From positions 124,001-188,000 of IMG/VR virus record IMGVR_UViG_3300028864_000016: a DNA stretch of 64,000 nucleotides, one strand, 5' to 3'. This document shows, in pieces, positions 2,469 through 63,406 of the stretch. A program made the translations under genes and the position numbers. Positions within the stretch are counted from its first letter, which is position 1. Every line of letters begins with the position of its first letter. Under the pieces are notes generated by a model that saw only the letters and a program-made list of their open reading frames with translations, was not told the origin of the DNA and did no database searches.

Positions 2469-4598
2469 TTATAGATGAATAACTCTTTCTTTAATTTCTT
2501 GTGTACGTCCTTTTGACCATAAGTTAGTACCTATATATCCACACGTTCTTCGCATTACTTGAAGTTCTGTTTCATCATCATTACCACAATTAGGACAATA
2601 CCATTTAAAGTTTTCATCATTTTTCATTTCACCTTTATATCCACATTTATAGCAAACATCTGGTTTGGTATTTATTTCAGCGTATTGAACATTATGATAC
2701 ATGAAATTAATTATTTGCTCAATTGCTTCTATATTTTTTGTCATATCTGGAACTTCTATATAGCTTATACATCCTCCAGAACTTATTGCATGAAACTGAG
2801 ATTCAAATTTTAACTTAGCAAATGCGTCTATTTCTTCTTTTACATTTACATGATAACTATTTGTATAATATAATTTATCAGTTATATTATTAATCTCTCC
2901 AAACTTTTGTTTATCTAACCTGCAAAATCTATAAACTGTATTTTCCGCTGGACTTCCATACAATCCAAAACCTATTCCAGTTTCTTTCTTCCAATCGTCA
3001 CATGCCTTTCTCATTCTTAGCATAATTTCTCTTGCTAGTTTTTCACCTTCTTCAGTAGTATGACTTACTCCTAGCATTGCATAAACCATTTCATATAAAC
3101 CTATATATCCTAATGATATAGTTGAATAACCATTATGTAATAACTTGTCTATCTTTTCACCTTTGTCCAATCTTGCTAATGCCCCATGTTGCCATAATAT
3201 AGGTGCTACATCTGATAAAGTTCCTTCTAATAACTCATGTCTAACCATTAATGCTTCCTTACATAATTGTAATCTCTCATCAAATATTCTCCACATTAAA
3301 TCAATATCTTTATGTGCTAATATTCCTATCCTTGATAAATTTAATGAAATAACGCCTTGATTAAATCTGCCATACCATTTGTAATTGCCATTTTCATCTT
3401 TCCATGGACTTAAATGCGATCTACAACCCATTGGTGGGAATGTATTTCCTTCATAATTTTGTCTTAATATTTTAGCTGATTGATAATCTGGAACTAATCT
3501 TTTAGCGTTACATTTTGCACAAAGCTTAGTTATATAATCATATTTACCACCTTCTAGACAATTATGAGTATCAAGTAAATAAACTAATTTAGGAAAAGCT
3601 TCACCTATTTCTTGCCCTTTATAGTTTTTCATACCTTCTAATCTTTGTTTAATCATTTCTTCACAAATCATAGCTTGTTCTTCTTCAAATTCAGAGCCTT
3701 CTTCAATTTCTAGATATATTGTAGCAAAAGGCGATTGCCCATTAGTTCCTGAGATTGTAGATAGTTGATATCTAATTGTTTGAACTCCACTTTTTAGTTC
3801 TTTTAATTTTATATCTTTTGCTAATATAATAGCAGTTTCTTCATTGAAATTCATATTTTTATAATGTTCCAATGCTTTATCATAAGCAACTCTTAAATAA
3901 GGGGCTAAATGTCTAATGGTTATGCTTTGCCCTCCATATTGACTGCTGGATACTTGTGCCATAATTTGAGTTGCTACAGTACATGCAGTTTCAAAAGATT
4001 TAGGGGTTTCAACTAATTTTTCATTGATAACTGTTCCATTAGTAAACATATCTTCTAAATTAATTAGGTCACAATTATGCATAGATTGCAATGTATAGTC
4101 CATATCATGCCAATGAATATCTCCACTTACATGAGCTTGAACTATTCTAGTTGGAATAAGTTTTCTTTTAGATAGATCCTTAGATACTTCTCCAGCTATT
4201 AAATCTCTTTGCGTTGAAACAACATATCCATTTTTATTTGAATTTTCTCTCATGACATCTTCATTTGTTGTATCTAATAATTTCAAAATACTTTCATCCG
4301 TTGTATTTATTTCTCTTTTGTATTCTTGTATAACTCTATATCCTTCATAAGATTTAGCAGTTTGAACATGTCCTAATTTAATTAATGTGTCATAAATATA
4401 ATCTTCAATCATATGTACTGTTGGAATTTTATCATCCATAGAAAATACTTTTTTACATTCATATGCTATTTTATCTGCAATAGATTCTTCTACTATTCCA
4501 CTGCCATATTTCATTGCTTTCAAAATAGCATTTCTAATCCTTTGTGTATCAAAGTCTACCTTTGTTCCGTCACGCTTTATAATTTGCATTAAATCCAC
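2469..4598 (-). CDS. nrdD: Class III anaerobic ribonucleotide reductase with N-terminal ATP cone
   Basis: IIKRDG ATP cone, HWHD, HNC, MGCRS, CxxC..CxxC Zn site, RRTCGYIG glycyl-radical loop. Confidence 0.97.
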   Translation of the reverse strand: MDLMQIIKRDGTKVDFDTQRIRNAILKAMKYGSGIVEESIADKIAYECKKVFSMDDKIPTVHMIEDYIYDTLIKLGHVQTAKSYEGYRVIQEYKREINTTDESILKLLDTTNEDVMRENSNKNGYVVSTQRDLIAGEVSKDLSKRKLIPTRIVQAHVSGDIHWHDMDYTLQSMHNCDLINLEDMFTNGTVINEKLVETPKSFETACTVATQIMAQVSSSQYGGQSITIRHLAPYLRVAYDKALEHYKNMNFNEETAIILAKDIKLKELKSGVQTIRYQLSTISGTNGQSPFATIYLEIEEGSEFEEEQAMICEEMIKQRLEGMKNYKGQEIGEAFPKLVYLLDTHNCLEGGKYDYITKLCAKCNAKRLVPDYQSAKILRQNYEGNTFPPMGCRSHLSPWKDENGNYKWYGRFNQGVISLNLSRIGILAHKDIDLMWRIFDERLQLCKEALMVRHELLEGTLSDVAPILWQHGALARLDKGEKIDKLLHNGYSTISLGYIGLYEMVYAMLGVSHTTEEGEKLAREIMLRMRKACDDWKKETGIGFGLYGSPAENTVYRFCRLDKQKFGEINNITDKLYYTNSYHVNVKEEIDAFAKLKFESQFHAISSGGCISYIEVPDMTKNIEAIEQIINFMYHNVQYAEINTKPDVCYKCGYKGEMKNDENFKWYCPNCGNDDETELQVMRRTCGYIGTNLWSKGRTQEIKERVIHL

Positions 4599-4843: not shown

Positions 4844-5178
4844 TACAGCATCTCCATTTCTCTAATTTCATAACGATGTAATATATCCCACTCAATATTA
4901 ACCCAAATATCAAATTGCCATGCTTCATCATGTTTATATTTTTCGAAGTTTCTTACTCTGCATTTATCTATAGAAAATCTATTATCATGTTTATTGCATT
5001 CTATTAAATCATCAATACATAGTTGTTTACACTTATCTAAATCTGAACTTACTGCAAAAGTTTCAAATCCTCCACAATCTTCACACCCAGTATCTCTTTG
5101 ACATAAATACACTTTCATTTCAATCTCTCCTTTCTTACTCATTAAATATATTTTGTCATTTCCCAATAAAATCAGCAT
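4843..5178 (-). CDS. Hypothetical protein (true start probably the later MKVY Met)
   Basis: ORF; AAAGGAG RBS precedes the internal ATG. Confidence 0.55.
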   Translation of the reverse strand: MLILLGNDKIYLMSKKGEIEMKVYLCQRDTGCEDCGGFETFAVSSDLDKCKQLCIDDLIECNKHDNRFSIDKCRVRNFEKYKHDEAWQFDIWVNIEWDILHRYEIREMEML

Positions 5179-5244
5179 TTTACGACATTATTCAACCTCT
5201 GTAAGCTAGTAATAGCCCCATTATTGAAAATCAATTTTTTAATT

Positions 5245-5637
5245 TTATAGTAAAATCCATTCTTTGCTATCAATCATAGGTAAAGATAAACATGTGATAT
5301 TAGGCTCACTATATAAATCAAAATATAATTCTTCACCTTCAACCCAATATGTACAATCTTTAAGTTTAGCTTTGTTGCCTTTACTCATATGCTCACGTGC
5401 AGTTACCCAATCAACATATAAGTCATCGTTTTTTAGTTCAATACAATAATTATAAACATCTTGAAGCCATTGTATTAATTGTGGTAAATTATTAAATGTT
5501 ATAGATTCTCTTATAAAAACATTGGGATCAGCTATGTATACTATTGGCTGATTTATTTTTATTACATCTAAAAGTCTTTCTATTCCACAATCTAATTCAA
5601 TACCTTGTATTGGTGAATTTTCAGAAATATTATTCAC
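5245..5637 (-). CDS. Hypothetical protein
   Basis: 130-aa co-oriented ORF with GGAG RBS. Confidence 0.6.
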   Translation of the reverse strand: MNNISENSPIQGIELDCGIERLLDVIKINQPIVYIADPNVFIRESITFNNLPQLIQWLQDVYNYCIELKNDDLYVDWVTAREHMSKGNKAKLKDCTYWVEGEELYFDLYSEPNITCLSLPMIDSKEWILL

Positions 5638-5660
5638 TTTAATGCACTCCTTTATATTTT

Positions 5661-5698
5661 ATTAATTTATTTAAGTCTACATAAATCTATTCTTTTAA
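5661..5698 (-). repeat. Copy of the ~38-bp dispersed intergenic element
   Basis: attaatttatttaagtctacataaatctattcttttaa; 33/38 identical to the copy at 29693-29730. Confidence 0.8.
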
Positions 5699-5941
5699 AT
5701 TATAATTCACTTAAATTATACATTGGAACTAAAACTTCTTTATTATTTATGTATACGTACATTGCTTGATATCCTTCTCTAGAAACTCTAACTACTTGAC
5801 CAGATGGGTTGTGCCTAACGAATTGTGTTTGTCCATTTATCATAACTTATTCACTCCCTTTCTATATTGTTATTTTATACCAAATAATTTCAAAAGTCAA
5901 TTCTTATTTTTATTAATTTATTTAATTTTATATTGTTTCTT

Positions 5942-7456
5942 TTATATGACATTTTTTAAATTTTCATTATGCAATCCTTTTAATTTATTTGCTATATCAT
6001 ATTTTATATATTCTTCTGGGGTTAAGTATTCTATGTATTTGAAATGATGTCCTTTATGATAATTTCTTTCTTCTCGACAAACTCTAGATATTCCCCCATT
6101 ATTCATTATCACTCCAAAATCTTTTAAGCTTTTATTTGCACATTCAGTAGCAGATATGTATACTTGTTTTGTTTCCAAACAAATTACAGCTTTTGAATTG
6201 ATTAATTTATTGATTTCTGTAGCTTTTTTATATTTGTTAATATTAGCTTTTTCAGAGTCATAATTACACCAATTAAGCCTGTTACCCATTTTTAAGTATT
6301 TTTGTGCAGTAGAACCACTAATATTCATAGTTTTTCCTAAATCTGTAGCGAATTCAAAATTATATGTATTCCATATGTCGCAAGCTTCTTTAACTCTGTT
6401 AGAACAAGCAAATTCGTGGCATTTTAACCAATCAATAGCATTTAAATTTATTTGACTAGCTAAATTACTTTTTAATATATTATTTTTTATCCAATCTAAA
6501 TTACTTAATCTACAGTCTATAATAATATAGTTTTCTTCCTTGATATCATTTTGCAAAGCTAATTCTTTCTTAAATCTATCATTTTCTTGTTCATCTTCTA
6601 ACGTTCTACCGTTTTTCATTGTATAAAAAGATTTTTCATAATGTTGCTCTCCATTTGCTTCTATGATATATTTCTCATTATTATATTTAAAATAAAAATC
6701 ATATCTTTTAGAGTTTGACCATTTTGCCTTATATTCTGGTTTAAAAGTAAGATTTAATTGTTGCAATAAACTAAAAATAAATTTATTTGGATATGATAAT
6801 CCATCATTGCAACACCCTAATTTTTTACTATAAAAATGGTCTATTTTTCTTAATTTTTCACATCCACAATATATACATTTAAATAATATTTTTGAATGTG
6901 ACTGTGATTTGTATTTATATGCGTCTTCTTTATTAGACAACCATTGAATCATCCAAGGATCTGTTGTTGCAATATCATTTATACCTTTCATTATTGCACT
7001 ATGACCAAAACAGACAGCACAATTTTGTCCAGCTTTAAAATTACTTTCAAGCCTAATGCCAATATAGCCACATATAGGACATTTATATTCATAGGCTCTT
7101 ACATTTGTACCATTGCTAAGTTTTTGTCTTGTACACTTTATAATTTTAACTCCATTAACAGTCTCATTTAGCTTATAAAAATATTCATTAGTTCTTAATT
7201 TTAAAATATGAGAAAGTCCACATTTCTGAAAATCACCAGTTCTTATGAAATATTTTTCATCATTATAATATAGTTCTAATTGTTGTTTTTTAGAATTATA
7301 ATCAAATATAGTTATATATCCCTCTATATCATCATAAATGAATTTAACTTTATACCCTTTAGAATTCTTCCAATCTGTTACTTGCTTTTTTGAATTTGCT
7401 CCAATTCCTTGTTTGCATGGCAATTCTTCTAAAAATACTTTCCTAATAGTTATCAC
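5942..7456 (-). CDS. Free-standing homing-type endonuclease: zinc ribbons, PD-(D/E)xK/Vsr-like nuclease, NUMOD1-like C-terminus
   Basis: CPICG/CAVC/CIYCG zinc ribbons; RYDFY..IEANGEQHY..DRFKK nuclease; VICLETKQVYISATEC..ISRVCR tail. Confidence 0.7.
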   Translation of the reverse strand: MITIRKVFLEELPCKQGIGANSKKQVTDWKNSKGYKVKFIYDDIEGYITIFDYNSKKQQLELYYNDEKYFIRTGDFQKCGLSHILKLRTNEYFYKLNETVNGVKIIKCTRQKLSNGTNVRAYEYKCPICGYIGIRLESNFKAGQNCAVCFGHSAIMKGINDIATTDPWMIQWLSNKEDAYKYKSQSHSKILFKCIYCGCEKLRKIDHFYSKKLGCCNDGLSYPNKFIFSLLQQLNLTFKPEYKAKWSNSKRYDFYFKYNNEKYIIEANGEQHYEKSFYTMKNGRTLEDEQENDRFKKELALQNDIKEENYIIIDCRLSNLDWIKNNILKSNLASQINLNAIDWLKCHEFACSNRVKEACDIWNTYNFEFATDLGKTMNISGSTAQKYLKMGNRLNWCNYDSEKANINKYKKATEINKLINSKAVICLETKQVYISATECANKSLKDFGVIMNNGGISRVCREERNYHKGHHFKYIEYLTPEEYIKYDIANKLKGLHNENLKNVI

Positions 7457-8051
7457 TCCTTTTGATTAATAATTTTCCAACAACCTTTCTAACACCTAAT
7501 TTATTTATACGTTTTTCATATTGATAATCTGTCTCATAACTTAATCTTTGAATAAATACATCTACTTTTATGTTTCCATTTGATAATGTTTTTATATAAT
7601 TTGGATTTCCTCTGTCTGTTGCAATATATTCTATCCCGTTAATAATTAATTTGCTTCCAAATGGGATATCTTTTGGAACAGCAACCTGTCCTTCTTTTAC
7701 AGGTATTCCACTAGCAGTAATAAACTTATTGTTTCCACACTCATTATAAGTTGCTCCATAATAAGATATTATAAAAGTTTTCTCTTCCCATTCAGGTTCA
7801 TTTTTCTGTTGTTCTTTTAGTAATATTTTAGCTTTTTCATCTTTCTTTTTACCAAGTTCAATTCTATCTTTTTCAAATTGTTCTTGAATCGGATTAATTC
7901 CTAATCCAAATCTATCTTTATGTACCATTATATCTACATTAGCTTCTTCTTTAATATTATTCGCTAATGGTGTCATAGTGGCTGTTGGTATCGTAAATAG
8001 TAAACTACTTGATAATAATACCATAGACAGACACATTGTCCTATTTCGCAT
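7443..8051 (-). CDS. Secreted 3D-domain cell-wall protein (Sps/YorM-like putative lytic transglycosylase)
   Basis: N-terminal signal-like segment; TASG, VAVPKDIPFGS, ATDRG, VDVF. Confidence 0.85.
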   Translation of the reverse strand: MRNRTMCLSMVLLSSSLLFTIPTATMTPLANNIKEEANVDIMVHKDRFGLGINPIQEQFEKDRIELGKKKDEKAKILLKEQQKNEPEWEEKTFIISYYGATYNECGNNKFITASGIPVKEGQVAVPKDIPFGSKLIINGIEYIATDRGNPNYIKTLSNGNIKVDVFIQRLSYETDYQYEKRINKLGVRKVVGKLLIKRSDNY

Positions 8052-8086
8052 CTAATCAACTCACTTTCTCTTCTATATATGTTTTT

Positions 8087-8983
8087 TTATATACTCATTA
8101 ATTCTGTAAATTCTATAACTTTTCCAGTTTCATTTGCTATTTCAACTATATTGGTAGCAAGTTCTTGAACTGCTGAATTTGTTTGTTCCATGCATGCACT
8201 CATTGAAACACATCCATCATTTATACCTTCTATACGAGATATTCTAAGTACATTGCTTTCTTTTAATTTTTTACTATTTTCTTTCCCCGTTTCAGTTTTT
8301 TCAAGAATAACGTTAGCCATAACTTGTAATTCTTTTATAATTTGACTTATCATTATACTAGAATCTTTAGTTTCTTGTGCGAGTTTTTTAACTTCATTTG
8401 CAACAACTCCAAATCCTTTACCTGCTTCACCTGCTCTTGCAGATTCAATATTGGCATTTAATGATAATAAATTGGTTTGATTAGCTATGTCTTTAATCAC
8501 ATCTGTTATTTTATCAATGTCTTTCATTTTAACATGTAATTCATTTGCATTATTATTGATATCAGCTATAGCATCGTGAAATATTGCCATAACTCCACTA
8601 TTGTCTTTAGCACTTTCATAAGCAAGATTAACTTCTGAAGAAATATTAACTATATTCGCTGTTACTTCTTCTACCGTTGCACTTATTTCCTCCACTGAAC
8701 CTGCTTGACCTGTTATATTATTACTAATTATAGACATCTCTTTTAATAATTTTTCATTTGATTCGGATGTTGACTTCTTATATTCTTCGAATGTTTTATC
8801 TTTTTCAATTAATGTTATATGTAGTTCTTCATTTTGTAATTCCAGTTCTTTGATTTTACTATCTTTCTTTAATTCAAGTTCTTCTAGTTTATCATTCGTT
8901 TCCTTTTCTAAAGTTATTCTTAGTTCATTTAACCCTTTTTCATTTTTAAATAATTTTTTCATCATATTAATACACTCCCTCAT
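8087..8983 (-). CDS. Cytoplasmic methyl-accepting chemotaxis protein (signalling domain only)
   Basis: [37 protein letters not shown] hairpin tip; EEISATVEE and EQTNSAVQE methylation-like helices; no TM segment. Confidence 0.93.
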
Positions 8984-9100
8984 TAATTTATTACTTGTTG
9001 GCTTTCAATACTTTGTCAACGCTAAATTGTCAGGAACTTGTATTATGTTTAGTTTTATGTCATTAATACTTTTATCACCTCTGTTTATATTAATTTATTA

Positions 9101-9460
9101 TTAATCTTTTATATACCCACAATCACAACCATATTTATATACAGTTTCATATACTTCTCTACCTTGCATTTCTCCTCTTGGCTCGTCCCGCTTATCAATT
9201 ACAATTAATTCATCTCCACATTTGGGACATCTACTTAACTTTTCTGCAAATTCTTCTATTTCTCTTGTTAGTTCAACTATAAATTTTTTGGGATTATTAT
9301 TAACATCGTCTATTAATTCTTTTATCATCTGAATTGTTTCTCCTACTTCATAACAATCTCTATTTATTATTTGTATTAATTCATATTTATCCATAATATC
9401 CACTCCCACTCCTCTCTTATTCATCTTTAATTTCGATTTCTTTATTTCTATCAAACACAT
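9101..9460 (-). CDS. Hypothetical protein with zinc ribbon
   Basis: CPKCG and CDCG. Confidence 0.6.
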   Translation of the reverse strand: MCLIEIKKSKLKMNKRGVGVDIMDKYELIQIINRDCYEVGETIQMIKELIDDVNNNPKKFIVELTREIEEFAEKLSRCPKCGDELIVIDKRDEPRGEMQGREVYETVYKYGCDCGYIKD

Positions 9461-9662
9461 AGTGAGTATGTTCGTTTATTGTTATTTTACTTTGAAAATA
9501 AAATTTATTATTACAATTACCATTCATACATCTAGCTACAAACTCAGTATATTTAGTTCCATCTATTTCTACTAATTTATAATCATCTGTTAATTGATAT
9601 TTAGATTCTTTACATTCAGGGCAATATAATCTATTGTCCTTCAAAATTGCTTTTAATATCAT
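9417..9662 (-). CDS. Small zinc-ribbon hypothetical protein
   Basis: CPEC and CMNGNC. Confidence 0.55.
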   Translation of the reverse strand: MILKAILKDNRLYCPECKESKYQLTDDYKLVEIDGTKYTEFVARCMNGNCNNKFYFQSKITINEHTHYVFDRNKEIEIKDE

Positions 9663-9677
9663 CTTAATCCGCTTCCT

Positions 9678-10004
9678 TTATTCATATTCTTTATATGTAT
9701 TAATAAATAAGGTATTTAAATTATGTATTTCATCTTCATCTATAGATATATTATTATTTATATATCCTAATTTGTTTTTGTCTATTACTTGATAAACTAT
9801 AATACTATTATTATTCACAGCGGTTTCATCATATACTTCATCTGAAATAATAGATTTAAATATTAATTTGTTATTTTGTTTTTCTAATACGCAATATCTT
9901 AATTTACTAGAATTAGTTCCTTTTTCTAATATACAATAGATACTATCTTTTGAAGCGGTTATTTCTTGGATACTCATCTGCTTTCCATGATATATCACAT
10001 GCAT
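9678..10004 (-). CDS. Hypothetical protein
   Basis: 108-aa ORF overlapping the sigma-factor stop. Confidence 0.6.
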   Translation of the reverse strand: MHVIYHGKQMSIQEITASKDSIYCILEKGTNSSKLRYCVLEKQNNKLIFKSIISDEVYDETAVNNNSIIVYQVIDKNKLGYINNNISIDEDEIHNLNTLFINTYKEYE

Positions 10005-10594
10005 AATGATACCTCATCTTTTAGTTCTATTTGTAACTTCTTTTTAATTTGTTTTATTCTATAGCGAATGCATTCTCTAGTTTTATCATACATCCTTCCT
10101 ATTTCAGCGTAATTTAATCCTTTCATAAAGTGTAAATTAATCATATCTTGTTCTTGACTAGAAAAAGTTTTTAACACTTCTGATATTTTTTGATTAGTAA
10201 TATTTAATAATGCAGATTCTTCACAATTACAATTATCATCTTTAATTGTTTCAATCATTTGTAAGTCATCAGATTCATCAACTATACTATATATACTGCA
10301 AGTTTCAATATCTCCACCACGTTTTTGTCGTTTATCTCTTTTATATGTATCAAATATAATGTCTTTAATTACTTTTTTCGCATAAGGTACGAATGACATA
10401 TTCTGTGAAATGTCGTAATAATTATAAGCTTTAATTAACCCAATATATGCTATTTGAATCAAATCATCTTTTTCATAATGTGAACACCATTTAATTACAT
10501 CTTTTGTATGTGTCATTTTATCAAATTCTTTTACTACTTCATCTAATGTCATTTCTTTATTTATACCGTTTTTACATCTTATTAATTTTTTCAT
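9995..10594 (-). CDS. Sigma-70 family sigma factor (sporulation/SigH-like, regions 2 and 4)
   Basis: DDLIQIAYIGLIKAYNYYD..SFVPYA region 2; LNYAEIGRMYDKTRECIRYR region 4 HTH. Confidence 0.9.
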   Translation of the reverse strand: MKKLIRCKNGINKEMTLDEVVKEFDKMTHTKDVIKWCSHYEKDDLIQIAYIGLIKAYNYYDISQNMSFVPYAKKVIKDIIFDTYKRDKRQKRGGDIETCSIYSIVDESDDLQMIETIKDDNCNCEESALLNITNQKISEVLKTFSSQEQDMINLHFMKGLNYAEIGRMYDKTRECIRYRIKQIKKKLQIELKDEVSLCM

Positions 10595-10632
10595 TATTTA
10601 CTCTCCTTTTTTTATTTTAATTTGTTAATGTA

Positions 10633-10661
10633 ATAGTACTATATAATGGATATGTTGTCAA
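10633..10661 (-). promoter_or_regulatory. Sigma-A type promoter for the sigma-MCP-3D operon
   Basis: TTGACA-17nt-TACTAT, flanked on both sides by the repeated AYAAATTAA box. Confidence 0.85.
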
Positions 10662-10683
10662 TGTTTATTTATATTAATTTATT

Positions 10684-10950
10684 TTATTCTTCGTTATAAT
10701 CATATCTAACTTTATCAATTTCATAAACATCTTTATATTCAAATCTATATAAGTTATCATTCTGTATTAATTCTTCAAAATCAATAATTTCAATTCCATC
10801 TTGGTCAACTTTTTCTTTTAAAATCTCAAGAATTACATCTTCTAATAACTCTTTGTCCTCAATAATGCCTTCTTTAATTGTTATAATTGTATCTCCATTT
10901 AATTGAATATCTCCAATCCAGTATATAAACCTTACTATGTAATCAATCAT
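10684..10950 (-). CDS. Acidic hypothetical protein
   Basis: 88-aa ORF. Confidence 0.55.
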   Translation of the reverse strand: MIDYIVRFIYWIGDIQLNGDTIITIKEGIIEDKELLEDVILEILKEKVDQDGIEIIDFEELIQNDNLYRFEYKDVYEIDKVRYDYNEE

Positions 10951-11144
10951 TATTTATCATCTCCTTCTTTTGAATTACTTTTTATGTTTTCATAAATTGA
11001 TATACTTAAGAATAAAGCAACTATACTATCTATTCCGTTTGGATTTGCATTTCCATATGAGATCAACTCTGCAAATTGCCAACATATTGCTATTATCACA
11101 TATAAAAATATAAGACTTATTAAATAATCTAATCTTTTCCTCAT
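10950..11144 (-). CDS. Small two-TM membrane protein
   Basis: Two hydrophobic helices. Confidence 0.55.
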   Translation of the reverse strand: MRKRLDYLISLIFLYVIIAICWQFAELISYGNANPNGIDSIVALFLSISIYENIKSNSKEGDDK

Positions 11145-11243
11145 TATTATCTCTCCTTATATCTATTAATTTATTAAAACCTTATAAAATTTCTCCTTTA
11201 TTTAGATTTTGGATAATTTAAATTCATTTCACATTCAACTCCC

Positions 11244-11837
11244 TTATTTTAAATCTATATTTACATCTTTTATAATACTGTCTTTTGGTATATGGAATAT
11301 ATAATCTGTTTCTTTATCATTAATTTCACCCATAGAACCTTTAAATAAAAATTTGCCTATATTATTTAATTCGTAAGTATTTTTTTCGTGAGTAACTTCC
11401 ATTATGTTTTGATTATCTTCATAAAATCCTATGTGGTTCATATTCATATCTTTGGATTGAATTCTTATAATATTATTACCATCTTTATAAGCATATCTAA
11501 TGTTATATGTATCAGATTTTTCACTATTTACACTACCAAAGAATAAAAAGTAATTTCCATTAAGTTGTTCCTTTAATCCAGTATAATCATTCAAAGCTAC
11601 TAATTCAGTTTTAGTTGTATAGGTTTCTTTGGTTGAATAGTTGCAAACAATATATGTTACAATACATAATATTAAAGATATTACAAACAATCCTACTGCC
11701 ATCATTATAATGGTAATTATTGTTTCAGCTACATCGTTTATTTCTAAAAGGCTTCTTAAAGTCTTATTAAATATTAAAAGTAATCCTATTAATATTCCAA
11801 TTCCAATTGCTATAGTCCAAAAGTTATTTATTATCAT
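11244..11837 (-). CDS. Membrane protein, two N-terminal TM helices plus soluble domain
   Basis: Hydrophobic residues 5-65; GNYFLFFGSV motif. Confidence 0.7.
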   Translation of the reverse strand: MIINNFWTIAIGIGILIGLLLIFNKTLRSLLEINDVAETIITIIMMAVGLFVISLILCIVTYIVCNYSTKETYTTKTELVALNDYTGLKEQLNGNYFLFFGSVNSEKSDTYNIRYAYKDGNNIIRIQSKDMNMNHIGFYEDNQNIMEVTHEKNTYELNNIGKFLFKGSMGEINDKETDYIFHIPKDSIIKDVNIDLK

Positions 11838-11967
11838 TTTTAATCATTCCTTTCATTTCTATTAATTTATTAATATTATGTTAAAATGCGAATTTGAAAA
11901 GGTTATTATCCTATAATTATTCGCATTAGTAATATATAATCCCGTAAATTTTAACAATTTTAAAAGA

Positions 11968-12180
11968 TTACGAATTACATTGTTCGTGTTTTGTTATTCT
12001 AAAACATTCAAAATTATTACAAGCCATACCATCACAAGCATCGACTTCTGAATTATCTATATCACAAAGACCTTCTCCTGCAAATTTACCTTCTATGTTT
12101 TCATATTCATCTCTATAGTGCAAACAAAAATCACAAATTGAACCAATATCTTTACATTCCTGTGAACAAAATTTAGCCAT
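11968..12180 (-). CDS. Small Cys-rich hypothetical protein
   Basis: Eight Cys in 70 aa. Confidence 0.55.
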   Translation of the reverse strand: MAKFCSQECKDIGSICDFCLHYRDEYENIEGKFAGEGLCDIDNSEVDACDGMACNNFECFRITKHEQCNS

Positions 12181-18487: not shown

Positions 18488-19054
18488 TTATTCTGTTTTA
18501 AAGTCAACTATTTCTTTTAATTTGTTTCTAAGATAATAATAGAAAGTGTTATAAATATATTTTCCACTATGTTCTTTATCTGTAAAAAAGAATGGACAAT
18601 TATATTGTTCTTGAAACGAATGTAATGAACCAACAAAGGATTCTTTAGGAAAATCAGTTTTATATTTGCCATCACATATATTTGAGTAATTACTATCTTC
18701 TATTAATAACCTCAATACACCATTACTACGTTCGAACTCCCTTTTAAATCTTTCTCTTCCCTGTGTAAAATTACCACTAATTTCTTCAGCATTAGCTTTT
18801 CTTTCAATAGATATTTCGTCATTGAAGTATATGTTATCTAATATGCCTAAAGATTCATTTTTAAGTATCATAAATGAATAATCGCCATAATCCAATTTAT
18901 ATTCCATATAACCTATTTTATTTGATTTTAACCACATCTTAATATGAGAGTTAACACGTTCACGTGTATCTATTAATATAACAATACTATTTATAATTTG
19001 TTTTATTTGTTTATCAGTGTATTTTTCCATATATAACCTCCAGCACTTTTGCAT
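18488..19054 (-). CDS. ERCC4/XPF-like nuclease (possible junction resolvase)
   Basis: ILIDTRE, GDY, IERKAN, LLIE. Confidence 0.85.
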   Translation of the reverse strand: MQKCWRLYMEKYTDKQIKQIINSIVILIDTRERVNSHIKMWLKSNKIGYMEYKLDYGDYSFMILKNESLGILDNIYFNDEISIERKANAEEISGNFTQGRERFKREFERSNGVLRLLIEDSNYSNICDGKYKTDFPKESFVGSLHSFQEQYNCPFFFTDKEHSGKYIYNTFYYYLRNKLKEIVDFKTE

Positions 19055-19736: not shown

Positions 19737-22700
19737 TTAAAGTTCATCTAATACTTCCTCCATGTTTGGTATAACCGAATAATTAGTTATATGCCACTCG
19801 ATTTTATTTTCATCAACTTCAAATAATGGTTTTACATTACCCTTTTTATCAGTCTTTTCTCCAACTTTTTTCCACCCAAACTTCTTTTCCATAGAATGAA
19901 TATAAATTACATCATTAACATTTAATTCACCATCATTATTCCACAACTTCTTATTAATTTTACATTTACATGTAGCCCCATTATTTAAGCAGTATGTATT
20001 TACTATAGGAGTATATTTAGTATTAATATCTGTAATTAAAGCATATCTTTTTTCGATTTTTCCATTTTTATAATCTATATAACCTAAGATTTCATTTTGA
20101 AAAGCAAGTTTTTCTTTAAAACTGATATCTGTATTAGGTATATTGACTACTTGATCTACTAATAACTTATAAGTATCCACTTCTTTAAATACTTTCTCCG
20201 TTTCTTTATTTGCATACTTTCTAATTAAATTTATATTTTCATCGCTTAATTTGCTTTTACTAAACTGTTTTTTACTATATAACTTATTATATAAATTAAC
20301 TATAGTTAATAACTTTTGTGATTTGCCAAAACAATCAAAATAATCTAATTTAATAAGTATTTCTAATTGACGTGAGTTACAAGATGTATTTTCTTTAATA
20401 TCTAATAATAAATCTAAAAAACTATTATATTTATTATTTTGAGATAATTCATATACTTCATCTGCCACCTTATTATTAAGATTTTTAATTGAGCCTACTC
20501 CTTTATATATACTATTTGTTTCCTTTGACATAAAATAACTAGCTTTTGCATAACCAAACTTAGGTGATGATATACTTATTCCCTTACTATTAGCATATTT
20601 AATTATACTAATAGTCTTCTCTTCTTTATCTTTGTTAATATTTAATGCTGTAGTTATAAATTCTAATGGATGATAATATCTTAGGTATCCAGCGATATAT
20701 CCAATATATGTATATGGTACAGCATGATTTTCACTAAAAAGATAATCCGATGCATCAGTTATTACCTGTATAAAGCTTACAATTAATTTCTTAGATTCTT
20801 CTTCATCTACATTATATTTTTCTTTCATAGTTTTAACGAAACCACTTGTAATTTTAGGAATAAACTTTTCTGTACCTGTTTTTTTTGCAAATCCACGCCT
20901 TACAATATCAGCCTCACCCATTGTATACCCACAAAATTCATGTAAGAAATTCATAATTTGCTCCTGATAAACCAAGTACCCCATTGTTGGGGCTAGAAAT
21001 TTGTTCAATGCTTCATGTCCATTATCTCTAAATTCACCATTAGATAATGCATTACGATAACTTGCACCAGCTGGTCTAATAGCACCATTTCCCATTGAAA
21101 CTAAATCCACATATCTAAAATTTGGATTAACTTGTTTAATTTTATTTAATGTTTTTTCACTTAATAGTGTTTTTATAAAAGCACCTGCACTATCTGATTC
21201 CCATTGAAATATCAAAGTATTATCTTTAGCCATTGATTGCCACACATCTTCTTCATCTGGTGTGTTTTCAGGAGTTAATCTTTCTATATTAGATAATTCG
21301 CAAGTTTCATTTATTATTTGAACATTATCTAACCCTAATAAATCTAACTTAACAAAATTTTGTGTATCTATTGATTTCATGCTTATCATTGATACAGGAT
21401 GTGAACAAGTTGATATACTACATAATCCCATAGAACTATCTAAAGGTATAGGGCTACAAATTTGCCCACATGGGTGTGTTCCTATAGAAACTATAGTTCC
21501 ATTGATTATATCAACATATTCAAACACTATTGGATATTCTTTTCTCATTTTAATTTCATCAGTTTCTATATTTTCACATATATAATTTGAAATTTTTAAA
21601 TAATCGTCCATGTACTCATGAACTTTTTTACTAGTACTATCTGTTAAAGTTCCATAACCTTCTACATCAATATCCATTTCTTTTTTTAATTCTTTAGGTA
21701 AATCTTTTTTATATAAAGCTCTACATACATCTCTAATACTACCCTTTAGAGCAACTGTGTTAAATGTTATTATATCAGCACAATATAAATCTTCTTTGCT
21801 ATATATATAATTTTTAACTAATTCTCTATGGTTTGGAGACCAGTCAGTATCAATATCTGCTAAACTTACTCTTTCAGTATTCATAAATCTTTCAAAATTC
21901 ATTTTATGTTTAATCGAATCTATTTCTGTTATCCCAATTAGATAAGCTATTTCACTTCCAGAACACGAACCTCTTGAATATCCAGCGAAAATGTTATTAC
22001 TCCTAGCCCATGTTTTAATATTTTCATCTAATAGCAAAAAGTCTACTGCTCCATTATGTATGTATGTTTCTAATTCATGTTCTATTCTTGGAATATATTC
22101 TGTTTTGTAGTTAGATAATTTATTTACTCCCTTTTCAACTATTCCCTCATTGATTTTTTGTTTTAATACATCTAAAGAATTATCATATAATTTAGGATAC
22201 TTGTATGACTTATCAACTTTAAATTCTTTAACTCTATCATACAATCTATTAGTATTTTCTAAGGCTTCATAAATTTCTTCTTCTGATAATATATTTTGCT
22301 TTTTGAATAATTCAACCAATTCATTGTATGATTTTAATGTTAAATCCCAACCATCTTCATTATCAAAAAAAATACCTTTTGATTTTTGTAATATTTCTCT
22401 ACCTTTTGCGTGTTTGTCATTTAATGCATGAGTATCAGTAGCTACAAGTAATGGAATATTATATTTTTTATGTAATTCACAAAGATATTTATTATAAGAA
22501 ATTTGGTCTTTTACTAAGTGGTGCTGAATCTCTAAATAACATCTGTTTGAGTTGTCAATTAAAAATTCAATAAATTTATCTTTTAATTCATCATTTCCTT
22601 TGCTTAATATTCCACCCAAACATGCTGTACTAATTAATATTTTACTACTTGTACTTATTAACTCTTCAAAGGTTATTCTTGGAGTATAATAAAAATGTCC

Positions 22701-23060
22701 ATCTTCTCTATTAAAAGCTTTTGAAACTAAGCTATTTAATTCTTCAAATGATTCATAATCAGTAGCATATAAACAAACATGATAATTATCTCTTATTTTT
22801 TCATCTAGAGATTCTGTAACATATGTTTCTATAGAATGAACATATTTAAAACCATTATCTTCACATTCACATTTCTTTTTATACCATTCAAACGTTGAAC
22901 CATGTTCTGTAAAACAAATTCCTTGTATTCCTAATGATTTATCACTTTTAATTTGTTTTATGTAATCTGAATATTTTGTTACTGAATCTATGTTTGTTAC
23001 ACCATTACTATACATTGTGTGACAGTGTGTTAATGTATATGTATTACTCATTTTATTCAC
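19737..23060 (-). CDS. dnaE: DNA polymerase III alpha subunit (C family, PHP domain)
   Basis: THCHTMYS PHP, FTEHG, RGSCSGS, LADIDTDW, GTHPCG, KLDLLGL, YLVYQEQ, FSENHA. Confidence 0.97.
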   Translation of the reverse strand: MNKMSNTYTLTHCHTMYSNGVTNIDSVTKYSDYIKQIKSDKSLGIQGICFTEHGSTFEWYKKKCECEDNGFKYVHSIETYVTESLDEKIRDNYHVCLYATDYESFEELNSLVSKAFNREDGHFYYTPRITFEELISTSSKILISTACLGGILSKGNDELKDKFIEFLIDNSNRCYLEIQHHLVKDQISYNKYLCELHKKYNIPLLVATDTHALNDKHAKGREILQKSKGIFFDNEDGWDLTLKSYNELVELFKKQNILSEEEIYEALENTNRLYDRVKEFKVDKSYKYPKLYDNSLDVLKQKINEGIVEKGVNKLSNYKTEYIPRIEHELETYIHNGAVDFLLLDENIKTWARSNNIFAGYSRGSCSGSEIAYLIGITEIDSIKHKMNFERFMNTERVSLADIDTDWSPNHRELVKNYIYSKEDLYCADIITFNTVALKGSIRDVCRALYKKDLPKELKKEMDIDVEGYGTLTDSTSKKVHEYMDDYLKISNYICENIETDEIKMRKEYPIVFEYVDIINGTIVSIGTHPCGQICSPIPLDSSMGLCSISTCSHPVSMISMKSIDTQNFVKLDLLGLDNVQIINETCELSNIERLTPENTPDEEDVWQSMAKDNTLIFQWESDSAGAFIKTLLSEKTLNKIKQVNPNFRYVDLVSMGNGAIRPAGASYRNALSNGEFRDNGHEALNKFLAPTMGYLVYQEQIMNFLHEFCGYTMGEADIVRRGFAKKTGTEKFIPKITSGFVKTMKEKYNVDEEESKKLIVSFIQVITDASDYLFSENHAVPYTYIGYIAGYLRYYHPLEFITTALNINKDKEEKTISIIKYANSKGISISSPKFGYAKASYFMSKETNSIYKGVGSIKNLNNKVADEVYELSQNNKYNSFLDLLLDIKENTSCNSRQLEILIKLDYFDCFGKSQKLLTIVNLYNKLYSKKQFSKSKLSDENINLIRKYANKETEKVFKEVDTYKLLVDQVVNIPNTDISFKEKLAFQNEILGYIDYKNGKIEKRYALITDINTKYTPIVNTYCLNNGATCKCKINKKLWNNDGELNVNDVIYIHSMEKKFGWKKVGEKTDKKGNVKPLFEVDENKIEWHITNYSVIPNMEEVLDEL

Positions 23061-48963: not shown

Positions 48964-49034
48964 TTCCTTTTATTAATTTGTTTTTATATGTATAATTATA
49001 TATGTATTACTTTAAATAGTCAACGGCATTTTAA

Positions 49035-63366: not shown

Positions 63367-63406
63367 CCTCTCTTTATTTTCTTAATTTGTTGAACTCTAT
63401 GATATT

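What the first reader, a model, noticed from the sequence alone, without database searches (positions are those of the whole stretch)
7443..10661. One promoter drives a sporulation-like sigma factor, a chemoreceptor and a muralytic 3D protein
Seen: TTGACA-17-TACTAT at 10633-10661 precedes sigma, three small ORFs, MCP and the 3D gene with short or overlapping junctions. Known: some Firmicute phages carry sporulation-type sigma factors that alter dormancy, and 3D/Sps proteins (YocH, YorM) are cell-wall enzymes linked to stationary-phase survival. Inference: this may be a host-behaviour module coordinating dormancy, motility and wall remodelling.
Basis: inference. Interest (0 to 1): 0.65.

Follow-up and report, generated by a model that had tools for sequence, protein, structure and literature searches.

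The report
Phage sigma, decoy chemoreceptor, wall enzyme
A 218-kb Clostridium-type phage from peat carries a sigma factor, a sensor-less soluble chemoreceptor and a secreted wall-cutting enzyme side by side. Relatives show these are three separately inherited pieces, and only the chemoreceptor–wall-enzyme pair travels together.

Summary
The sequence features are real. TTGACA-17-TACTAT sits at 10661-10633 on the minus strand. It is followed by a sigma-70-family gene, three small ORFs, an MCP-signalling-domain gene and a YuiC/MltA-like "3D" gene.

The one-promoter "dormancy, motility, wall" module is only partly supported.
- **Sigma class.** The sigma passes only the generic sigma-70 superfamily model. 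Its best specific family hit is FliA/WhiG, far below cut-off, so it is not shown to be sporulation-type.
- **Sigma linkage.** In about 8 MCP-carrying lineages no sigma lies within 10 kb. Five relatives searched whole, one of them complete, have no homologue. gyrB-gyrA sit where this phage has sigma and a 108-aa ORF.
- **Separate control of the MCP.** A 135-nt gap before the MCP holds a motif (GACAATTTAGnGTTGACA…AGCCAAC). It is invariant in six lineages and unique in this genome, which suggests separate control of the MCP and 3D genes.
- **Conserved pair.** The 3D gene directly follows the MCP in 9 of 12 MCP-bearing loci.
- **Backbone gene.** The 3D gene also occurs without the MCP, in sigma-only relatives and in phiCD211-type phages.

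The MCP is all-helical, with no membrane segment or sensor domain. It keeps the receptor tip and a methylation-site match, and it is predicted to bind CheW. The most likely reading is a phage decoy or constitutive receptor acting on host chemotaxis arrays. That mechanism is inferred, not shown.

The parts
10633..10661 (-). Sigma-A-type promoter-like site TTGACA-17-TACTAT, upstream of the sigma gene
   Evidence: It is one of five exact matches in the window. All five are intergenic and on the coding strand.
10617..10625 (-). ACAAATTAA leader motif between the -10 hexamer and the ribosome-binding site
   Evidence: The motif occurs 81 times in the genome, 50 of them on the minus strand. It typically lies 18-36 nt before start codons and 7-22 nt after -10 hexamers.
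9995..10594 (-). Short sigma-70-family factor (199 aa, regions 2 and 4) belonging to no specific subfamily
   Evidence: Pfam Sigma70_r2 6e-8 and Sigma70_r4 3e-7. In NCBIfam only the generic TIGR02937 model passes its cut-off. The nearest solved structure is a sigma-H factor, 3mzy, E 3.5e-8. Family placement.
9678..10004 (-). o108, a 108-aa protein of unknown function that travels with the sigma
   Evidence: No Pfam, PHROG or PADLOC hit. A homologue sits next to the sigma in L096. It is absent from the MCP-only relatives.
9417..9662 (-). o81, a four-cysteine (CxxC…CxxxxC) zinc-ribbon-like small protein
   Evidence: Homologues lie just upstream of the MCP in L010, L013 and L015.
9101..9394 (-). 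o119, a small zinc-ribbon backbone protein (probable start M23, 97 aa)
   Evidence: An RBS precedes M23 (reading of the sequence) and homology begins at residues 14-23. Homologues follow the sigma in L004, L096 and L097. In sigma-less relatives they follow gyrA.
8997..9031 (-). Conserved cis element GACAATTTAGCGTTGACA-N11-AGCCAAC in the 135-nt gap before the MCP
   Evidence: Invariant blocks are shared by six lineages whose MCPs are 43-81% identical. The element is unique in this genome. Ten of 21 IMG/VR matches to the 18-mer lie just upstream of an MCP-family ORF. There is no Rfam match and no covariation.
8087..8965 (-). Soluble, sensor-less MCP-like protein (292 aa) with a conserved signalling tip and a methylation helix
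   Evidence: Pfam MCPsignal 1.3e-30 and phrog_8572. The family alignment has an invariant tip. The AlphaFold2 model is all helix, pLDDT 89.7. There is no hydrophobic segment. Methylation-consensus matches. Predicted CheW binding scores 0.70 against a best control of 0.02.
7443..8051 (-). Exported YuiC/MltA-type (3D/Sps) putative lytic transglycosylase (202 aa)
   Evidence: No Pfam hit for this protein; 2 of 23 relatives hit the 3D model weakly. The fold matches YuiC at Z 10.5, diffocin baseplate chain 8v3w_H at Z 10.7 and MltA at Z 8-9. D146 and D164 are invariant in the family. Residues 6-24 are hydrophobic.
5942..7456 (-). Free-standing HNH/homing-endonuclease-like gene inserted after the 3D gene
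   Evidence: phrog_4538 6e-59 and phrog_559 HNH; PADLOC HEase. It is absent at this site in relatives, where the 3D gene is followed by homologues of o47 (window 5843-5700) and o130 (window 5637-5245).
5872..5900 (-). Promoter-like site TTGACT-17-TAAAAT before the next gene, o47 (window 5843-5700)
   Evidence: It lies in the 98-nt gap after the HNH gene.

Best explanation
The stretch is a variable accessory segment in the replication and nucleotide-metabolism arm of a roughly 218-kb, 25% G+C jumbo phage. The phage probably infects Clostridium and comes from peat and wetland samples. The segment combines four independently inherited parts.

1. **An early cassette.** A host sigma-A-type promoter is followed by a divergent short sigma-70-family factor and o108. 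In relatives, gyrB-gyrA sit at this position.
2. **Backbone genes.** These are the small zinc-ribbon proteins o81 and o119 and the exported 3D enzyme.
3. **The MCP.** A sensor-less cytoplasmic MCP sits directly before the 3D gene. It is preceded by its own conserved cis element, so the MCP and 3D genes probably have their own regulated start as well as any read-through from upstream.
4. **A homing endonuclease** inserted after the 3D gene.

**Proposed mechanism (inferred).** The MCP keeps the CheA/CheW-binding tip and the methylation helix but has no ligand-binding or membrane part. It would therefore plug into, or draw proteins away from, the host's chemosensory arrays. That would fix their output regardless of attractant and change how infected cells swim. 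The 3D protein would be secreted and would cut peptidoglycan as a YuiC-like lytic transglycosylase. The sigma would redirect host RNA polymerase to a gene set not yet identified. It is not required across the lineage.
For: **Context.** The window is part of a 218,173-bp virus record. All its genes are on one strand and G+C is 25%. Flanking genes include PolIII-alpha, ERCC4, NrdD and NrdG.

**Synteny.** The 3D gene directly follows the MCP in 9 of 12 MCP loci. No sigma lies within 10 kb in about 8 MCP lineages. Five whole relatives have no homologue and no Sigma70_r2 match; they include a 229-kb record rated 100% complete and a 196-kb record with terminal repeats. Sigma-bearing relatives L004, L096 and L097 have sigma, then o119, then 3D, with no MCP. 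This genome has no gyrB, while relatives have gyrBA at this position.

**Own control of the MCP.** There is a 135-nt gap before the MCP. The element in it is invariant across MCPs that are 43-81% identical, unique in this genome, and lies upstream of MCP-family ORFs in 10 IMG/VR contigs.

**MCP.** The tip residues are invariant in 27 family members. A methylation-consensus match with an invariant EE pair is present in nearly all members. The model is all-helical with pLDDT 89.7. Alignment to a cellular MCP needs matching gaps on both arms, 7 residues on the first arm and 7 plus 10 on the second. Predicted CheW_BACSU binding through tip residues 168-183 scores 0.70 against a best control of 0.02. 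That mark was reached by 51 of 78 solved complexes and 2 of 108 mismatched pairs; runs agreed on at least 96% of contacts and partner pLDDT was 79. The phage has no CheW of its own.

**3D.** Fold matches are. Invariant D146 and D164 are read as the equivalents of YuiC D151 and the catalytic D162 (PMC4499186). The architecture of signal peptide, linker and Sps domain matches the SpsC group that includes YuiC. A homologue annotated 'conserved exported protein' sits in the replication region of phiCD211 without an MCP.
Against: - No transcript ends are known. Only assembled contigs of a metatranscriptome were available. Exact pieces lie on o81, on o108 and on 10609-10796, which spans the promoter. 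None lies on the MCP or the 3D gene, and DNA carry-over cannot be excluded.
- The element before the MCP has no good -10 at a fixed distance. The spacing from TTGACA to AGCCAAC varies from 6 to 12 nt, so its role as promoter, operator or RNA element is open.
- The CheW prediction may only reflect likeness to solved MCP-CheW complexes, and it used a Bacillus CheW rather than the host's.
- The host is not identified.
- The first of the three '3D' aspartates is replaced (Pro126), and Pfam does not recognise the protein.
- Relatives could carry an undetectably divergent sigma.
- The record is rated 88% complete, so gyrB could lie in the missing part.
Confidence: 0.6

Rival explanations
1. One promoter drives a single operon whose products jointly reprogram host dormancy (sigma), motility (MCP) and wall remodelling (3D).
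For: - All genes are co-oriented, four of five junctions are short, and no terminator is predicted.
- All four sigma-bearing loci also have the 3D gene 0.5-2.8 kb downstream.
- The sigma's neighbours in sequence space include short sigmas with sub-threshold SigK/E/F/G or SigH matches.
- Sps/3D proteins have been linked to stationary-phase survival (PMC4499186).
Against: - Sigma and MCP are inherited independently.
- The MCP has a conserved upstream element of its own.
- The sigma fails every sporulation-sigma cut-off, and its best specific hit is FliA/WhiG.
- The 3D gene is a backbone gene, present whether or not sigma or the MCP is there.
Confidence: 0.1
2. The sigma is simply this phage's middle or late transcription factor, made early from a host-type promoter as with SPO1 gp28. 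The MCP and 3D genes are unrelated neighbours.
For: - The sigma sits behind a sigma-A-type promoter in the early/replication arm.
- It is the only sigma in the genome.
- Phage sigma PHROGs match it: phrog_351 at 1e-17 and phrog_1740 at 8e-13.
- Homologues sit at the same genomic position in related phages.
Against: - Five related phages that share the backbone have no detectable sigma, including one complete genome. The lineage can therefore complete its cycle without it.
- No sigma-specific promoter motif was found.
Confidence: 0.3
3. The MCP-like protein does not act on chemotaxis. It could be a coiled-coil scaffold or polar-targeting protein, or part of another signalling or anti-defence function, and it may work together with the 3D enzyme.
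For: - It has no sensor or membrane part and carries an extra ~85-residue N-terminal coiled coil.
- It is tightly paired with an exported enzyme, which has no obvious link to chemotaxis.
- Its PHROG family has no assigned function.
Against: - Selection has kept exactly the residues that matter for array signalling: the invariant tip and the methylation-site EE pair.
- The tip is predicted to bind CheW.
- PADLOC gives no meaningful hit.
Confidence: 0.2

Closest known systems
Cytoplasmic (soluble) methyl-accepting chemotaxis proteins of Firmicutes and other bacteria
   Same: - An MCPsignal domain well above the Pfam cut-off.
- A receptor-tip sequence of the Firmicute type ([24 protein letters not shown]).
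- Matches to the methylation-site pattern on both arms.
- A predicted CheW contact through the tip.
   Different: - It is encoded by large phages as a tight clade of proteins about 288 aa long. There is a clear E-value gap to cellular MCPs, from 1e-41 to 1e-20.
- It has no PAS, Cache, HAMP, globin or other input domain and no membrane segment.
- Alignment to a close cellular homologue needs 7- and 17-residue gaps on the two arms, so its arms are shorter.
YuiC / SpsC-group stationary-phase-survival proteins and MltA (3D-domain lytic transglycosylases); YorM of prophage SP-beta
   Same: - A double-psi beta-barrel fold: Z 10.5 to YuiC at 25% identity, Z 8-9 to MltA.
- The same layout as the SpsC group: signal peptide, short linker, catalytic domain.
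- Motif equivalents of YuiC D151 and the catalytic D162 are invariant.
- There is a phage-borne precedent, YorM.
   Different: - Pfam 3D does not detect it.
- The first conserved Asp (YuiC D129) is replaced by Pro126.
- There is a 7-residue insertion between the second and third Asp.
- It is encoded among early replication genes of large clostridial phages, not as a tail lysin or endolysin.
Phage-encoded sigma factors (sporulation-like sigmas of Bacillus phages, Schwartz et al. 2022; SPO1 gp28)
   Same: - A short sigma with regions 2 and 4, carried by a phage of a Firmicute-type host.
- Region 2 is 44% identical over 54 residues to the sigmas of Bacillus phages SP-10 and Goe26.
- It is expressed from a host-type promoter.
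   Different: - Only the generic superfamily model passes, and the best specific TIGRFAM is FliA/WhiG, not SigF/G/E/K.
- Its own clade of metagenomic sequences has no sporulation-family signal.
- It is sporadic within its own phage lineage.

Membership tests
Sigma-70 family | Region 2 and region 4 domains | tested here: met
   Pfam Sigma70_r2 scores 32.8 bits against a cut-off of 24, and Sigma70_r4 scores 30.2 against 24.1. TIGR02937 scores 82.5 against 42.9.
Sporulation sigma factors (SigF/G/E/K, SigH) | Score above the curated cut-off of a sporulation-sigma model | tested here: not met
   Scores against cut-offs: SigK 40 against 252; SigG 35.5 against 372; SigE 30 against 339; SigF 30 against 321; SigH 31.7 against 294.8; the SigH-like model PRK08295.1-4 53.7 against 212.
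Sporulation sigma factors (SigF/G/E/K, SigH) | Best specific TIGRFAM hit is a sporulation family (rule of Schwartz et al. 2022) | tested here: not met
   After skipping the general sigma70-ECF model, the best hit is TIGR02479 FliA_WhiG at 1.8e-16. The rule is read from PMC9429907.
Sporulation sigma factors (SigF/G/E/K, SigH) | Phylogenetic placement inside the sporulation-sigma clade | tested here: inconclusive
   The tree of the 44 nearest representatives holds no named reference sigmas. The window's 12-member clade gives only generic hits. A neighbouring clade gives sub-threshold SigK/E/F/G hits, and a third clade is SigH-like at about 170 bits.
Methyl-accepting chemotaxis proteins | MCP signalling domain with a conserved hairpin tip | tested here: met
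   PF00015 scores 107 bits against a cut-off of 34.6. The tip residues Q169, N171-L173, L175-A177, I179, E180, A184, G185, G188, G190 and F191 are invariant in 27 sequences.
Methyl-accepting chemotaxis proteins | Methylation (adaptation) sites | tested here: met
   The pattern [ASTG]{2}xx[EQ]{2}xx[ASTG]{2}, recalled from memory, matches at residues 94-103 and 262-271. The first site is present in nearly all family members. Actual methylation was not tested.
Methyl-accepting chemotaxis proteins | Ligand-binding input domain and membrane anchor (canonical receptors) | tested here: not met
   No other Pfam domain was found. The highest 19-residue hydropathy is 1.29, too low for a membrane helix. 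The AlphaFold2 model is a single all-helical element.
Methyl-accepting chemotaxis proteins | Binds CheW/CheA | tested here: inconclusive
   The predicted complex with CheW_BACSU scores 0.70 against a best control of 0.02. This supports likeness to solved complexes and is not a measurement. The host's own CheW is unknown.
3D / Sps (YuiC, MltA) lytic transglycosylases | Match to the Pfam 3D domain (PF06725) | tested here: not met
   No hit even at E = 10 for the window protein. Two of 23 relatives match weakly, best E 0.0034.
3D / Sps (YuiC, MltA) lytic transglycosylases | MltA-type double-psi beta-barrel fold | tested here: met
   YuiC: Z 10.5, rmsd 3.2 over 87 residues, 25% identity. MltA: Z 8.2-9.2. 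Foldseek probabilities are at least 0.99. The domain's pLDDT is above 90.
3D / Sps (YuiC, MltA) lytic transglycosylases | Three conserved aspartates, including the catalytic one (YuiC D129, D151, D162) | tested here: inconclusive
   D146 (in ATDxG) and D164 (in VDVF) are invariant and are mapped by motif order to YuiC D151 and D162. The D129 position is Pro126. No residue-level structural alignment was available.
Single operon from the 10661 promoter | No internal start signal, and linkage conserved in relatives | tested here: not met
   A conserved element containing TTGACA lies in the 135-nt gap before the MCP. Sigma-MCP linkage is absent in all non-identical relatives.
Single operon from the 10661 promoter | Co-transcription seen in RNA | not testable with these tools
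   Only assembled contigs of metatranscriptomes were available. Three exact 151-205-nt pieces were found, and none crosses a junction inside the proposed operon.

The most novel reading that the evidence does not exclude
A clade of large clostridial phages from peat and wetland encodes a sensor-less chemoreceptor that enters or draws proteins away from the host's CheA/CheW arrays. This takes over the swimming behaviour of infected cells, for example to stop flagellar rotation and block superinfection, or to hold cells in place. It is expressed together with a secreted lytic transglycosylase from a dedicated conserved control element. An even bolder version is that sigma, MCP and wall enzyme together mimic a sigma-D-type motility regulon; this version is unlikely (about 0.05).
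Probability: 0.35. Interest if true: 0.75.

Novelty: new variant of a known kind. Interest (0 to 1): 0.5.

Why it matters
Phages are known to alter host metabolism, dormancy and surface structures. Five full-text searches found no description of a phage-borne chemoreceptor acting on the chemotaxis signalling array, and the matching PHROG family has no assigned function. A conserved, compact protein of about 288 residues that keeps only the array-binding and adaptation parts of a receptor would be a natural dominant probe of chemosensory arrays in anaerobic Firmicutes. It would also be a new kind of host take-over gene.

The result also guards against over-reading gene neighbourhoods in jumbo phages. 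Here three 'behaviour' genes sit together through independent insertions around one backbone gene.

Tried and rejected
- Megablast of the region against GenBank phages gave no match.
- Rfam at E <= 1 over 5000-12000 gave nothing.
- RNAalifold on the element before the MCP gave only an invariant 4-bp GUUG/CAAC stem at -1.1 kcal/mol with no covariation, so an RNA structure is not supported.
- I considered a sigma-28/sigma-D-type reading of the element (TAGAGTT … GCCAACA). I rejected it because the spacing varies by my count from 13 to 19 nt and the key CGA of the -10 is missing; the consensus was recalled from memory.
- A second candidate promoter class, TGGAAGTTAACAAATTAA, has only a handful of copies and was not pursued.
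- PADLOC gave no meaningful defence-system hit.
- PDB sequence searches with the 3D protein alone and with its family profile gave nothing.
- ESM Atlas look-ups for o119 and o108 gave only generic zinc-ribbon or unnamed viral clusters.
- Weak sigma-like ORFs in L025 turned out to be generic helix-turn-helix matches.
- The 18-mer of the MCP element also occurs inside an unrelated coding gene in 11 IMG/VR contigs, which I take as coincidence.
- Five literature searches found no paper on phage-encoded MCPs.

Full report
**What the window is.** The window is bases 124001-188000 of a 218,173-bp IMG/VR virus record rated 88% complete. G+C is 25% and every sizeable ORF is on the minus strand. The finding lies between replication genes and nucleotide-metabolism genes. 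PolIII-alpha is at 19737-23060 and ERCC4 at 18488-19054. NrdD is at 2469-4598, NrdG at 1929-2426, and a dUTPase-like gene at 175-684. The same DNA is found in many peat-metagenome runs. The nearest named homologues come from Clostridium assemblies, and 3D homologues occur in phiCD211-type Clostridioides phages. The host is therefore probably a Clostridium-like anaerobe.

**The observation.**
- The promoter-like site is exactly as described, TTGACA-17-TACTAT at 10661-10633, 38 nt before the sigma start.
- By number such sites are not above chance. However, all five exact TTGACA-N16-18-TAnnnT matches in the window lie on the coding strand and within the 7.5% of positions that are non-coding. Four of them lie 24-53 nt before a start codon.
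- Across the genome many of these sites are followed by a shared ACAAATTAA leader motif. I accept it as a probable host sigma-A-type promoter.
- The gene order is as stated. The true junctions are -10, +15, +22, +135 and +35 nt.

**The sigma.**
- It has regions 2 and 4, but only the generic sigma-70 superfamily model passes its cut-off.
- The best specific models are FliA/WhiG (60.5 bits against 189.6) and a SigH-like model (53.7 against 212). SigK, SigE, SigF and SigG score 28-40 bits against cut-offs of about 250-460.
- The nearest solved structure is a sigma-H factor at E 3.5e-8.
- An exhaustive search found 50 cluster representatives at E <= 1e-10, mostly proteins of 186-211 aa.
- In a tree of the 44 nearest, the window's sigma falls in a 12-member clade whose sampled members again match only the generic model. 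Neighbouring clades give sub-threshold SigK/E/F/G matches or are SigH-like.
- By the published rule for calling phage sigmas 'sporulation-like' (PMC9429907), this one is not.

**The MCP.**
- The domain match is strong at 1.3e-30.
- It belongs to a tight clade of proteins about 288 aa long, 42-82% identical, found on contigs of 130-284 kb. A clear gap separates them from cellular MCPs.
- The family start, [10 protein letters not shown], puts the real start at 8965.
- The receptor tip is invariant. A match to the methylation-site pattern with an invariant EE pair is kept in nearly all members.
- The AlphaFold2 model is all helix at pLDDT 89.7. There is no hydrophobic segment and no other domain.
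- Against a Geosporobacter MCP the alignment needs 7- and 17-residue gaps on the two arms. This is the usual signature of a shorter receptor length class.
- A predicted complex of the tip dimer with B. subtilis CheW scored 0.70 against a best control of 0.02. That mark was reached by 51 of 78 solved complexes and 2 of 108 mismatched pairs. Runs agreed on at least 96% of contacts, partner pLDDT was 79, and the contacts lie on tip residues 168-183. Because MCP-CheW complexes have been solved, this shows likeness rather than binding.
- The phage encodes no CheW.

**The 3D protein.**
- Pfam does not see it and only 2 of 23 relatives hit the 3D model weakly.
- The modelled C-terminal domain (residues 84-201, pLDDT above 90) matches YuiC at Z 10.5 with 25% identity. 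It also matches diffocin baseplate chain 8v3w_H at Z 10.7 and MltA at Z 8-9.
- The family keeps D146 and D164 invariant. By motif order these correspond to YuiC D151 and the catalytic D162 (PMC4499186). The first aspartate is replaced by Pro126.
- A hydrophobic N-terminus (residues 6-24) and a helical linker give the same layout as the SpsC group.

**Relatives decide the interpretation.**
- With profile searches on fetched loci, the 3D gene directly follows the MCP in 9 of 12 MCP loci. o119 and/or o81 lie upstream in most of these 9 loci.
- No sigma lies within 10 kb in any non-identical MCP locus.
- Five whole relatives have neither a homologue of this sigma nor any Sigma70_r2 match. Two of them are a 229-kb complete genome and a 196-kb genome with terminal repeats.
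- In those phages gyrB-gyrA occupy the slot between the o88 homologue (o88 = window 10950-10684, just upstream of the sigma promoter) and o119. This phage has sigma and o108 in that slot and no detectable gyrB.
- Conversely, the sigma homologues found on long contigs (L004 53%, L096 44%, L097 39% identity) are followed by o119 and then the 3D gene, with no MCP.
- phiCD211 has the 3D homologue in its replication region with neither sigma nor MCP.

So the 3D gene and o119 are backbone genes, the sigma (with o108) and the MCP are independent accessory insertions, and the HNH gene is a further insertion.

**Separate control of the MCP.**
- The 135-nt gap before the MCP holds GACAATTTAGnGTTGACA followed by AGCCAAC. 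Both blocks are invariant in six lineages whose MCPs are only 43-81% identical.
- The element occurs once in this genome. In IMG/VR it lies just upstream of MCP-family ORFs in 10 contigs.
- It contains a perfect -35 hexamer but no fixed -10. The spacing between the two blocks varies from 6 to 12 nt.
- There is no Rfam match and no covariation.
- I read it as a gene-specific promoter or operator; this is inference.
- Three lineages (L010, L013/14, L025) lack it.

**RNA evidence is thin.** One wetland metatranscriptome holds exact contigs on o81, on o108 and on 10609-10796. The last of these crosses the promoter and so hints at read-through from the upstream gene. Nothing lies on the MCP or 3D genes. 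Contigs cannot show transcript ends or exclude DNA carry-over.

**Verdict.** The features are real and the protein calls are broadly right. The unifying story of one promoter, a sporulation-type sigma and a coordinated module is not supported by the family tests or by synteny. The part worth following is the conserved pair of a phage sensor-less MCP and an exported YuiC-like enzyme, together with its dedicated upstream element.

Noticed in passing
whole genome; e.g. window 10617-10625, 63382-63390, 48973-48981 (minus strand): The motif ACAAATTAA, often as AACAAATTAA(A/T)AGAAATA, occurs 81 times in the genome, 50 of them on the minus strand. It mostly lies 18-36 nt before start codons and 7-22 nt after -10 hexamers. 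It looks like a shared 5'-leader or transcription-start-region element of unknown function.
   Followed up: partly
window 9678-10594, compared with L008 2683-6862, L006 2959-7088 and L007 2659-6691: Relatives carry gyrB-gyrA exactly where this phage has sigma and o108. No gyrB was detected anywhere in this 88%-complete record. This looks like a cassette swap at a hot spot.
   Followed up: partly
window 2469-4598, compared with L006 11436-13556: NrdD is 99.4% identical to that of relative L006, while the neighbouring MCP is 81% and the 3D protein 47% identical. This indicates recent recombination, so the genome is a mosaic.
   Followed up: no
L012 13468-15800, L022 14791-17100, L096 12297-15763: In several relatives NrdD is split into two ORFs with an intervening gene or gap. 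This may be an intron, an intein or a homing-endonuclease insertion.
   Followed up: no
window 5942-7456: A 504-aa cysteine-rich HNH/homing-endonuclease-like gene (phrog_4538, phrog_559) is inserted between the 3D gene and o47. It is absent at this site in relatives.
   Followed up: partly
proteins P0051 and P0052 (428 aa): Two distant members of the phage MCP family carry an extra C-terminal domain of about 130 residues with no Pfam name.
   Followed up: no
L096 9012-10232: An IS605 OrfB/TnpB-like gene sits between o119 and the 3D gene in a sigma-bearing relative. This is further evidence that the segment is a hot spot for insertions.
   Followed up: no
L099, L104-L108, L115, L117: The 18-mer GACAATTTAGGGTTGACA also occurs inside a conserved coding gene of unrelated phage contigs, in a region whose DNA codes …INGGTIGLDDRNKRY… (my reading). 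I take this as coincidence with the MCP element.
   Followed up: partly
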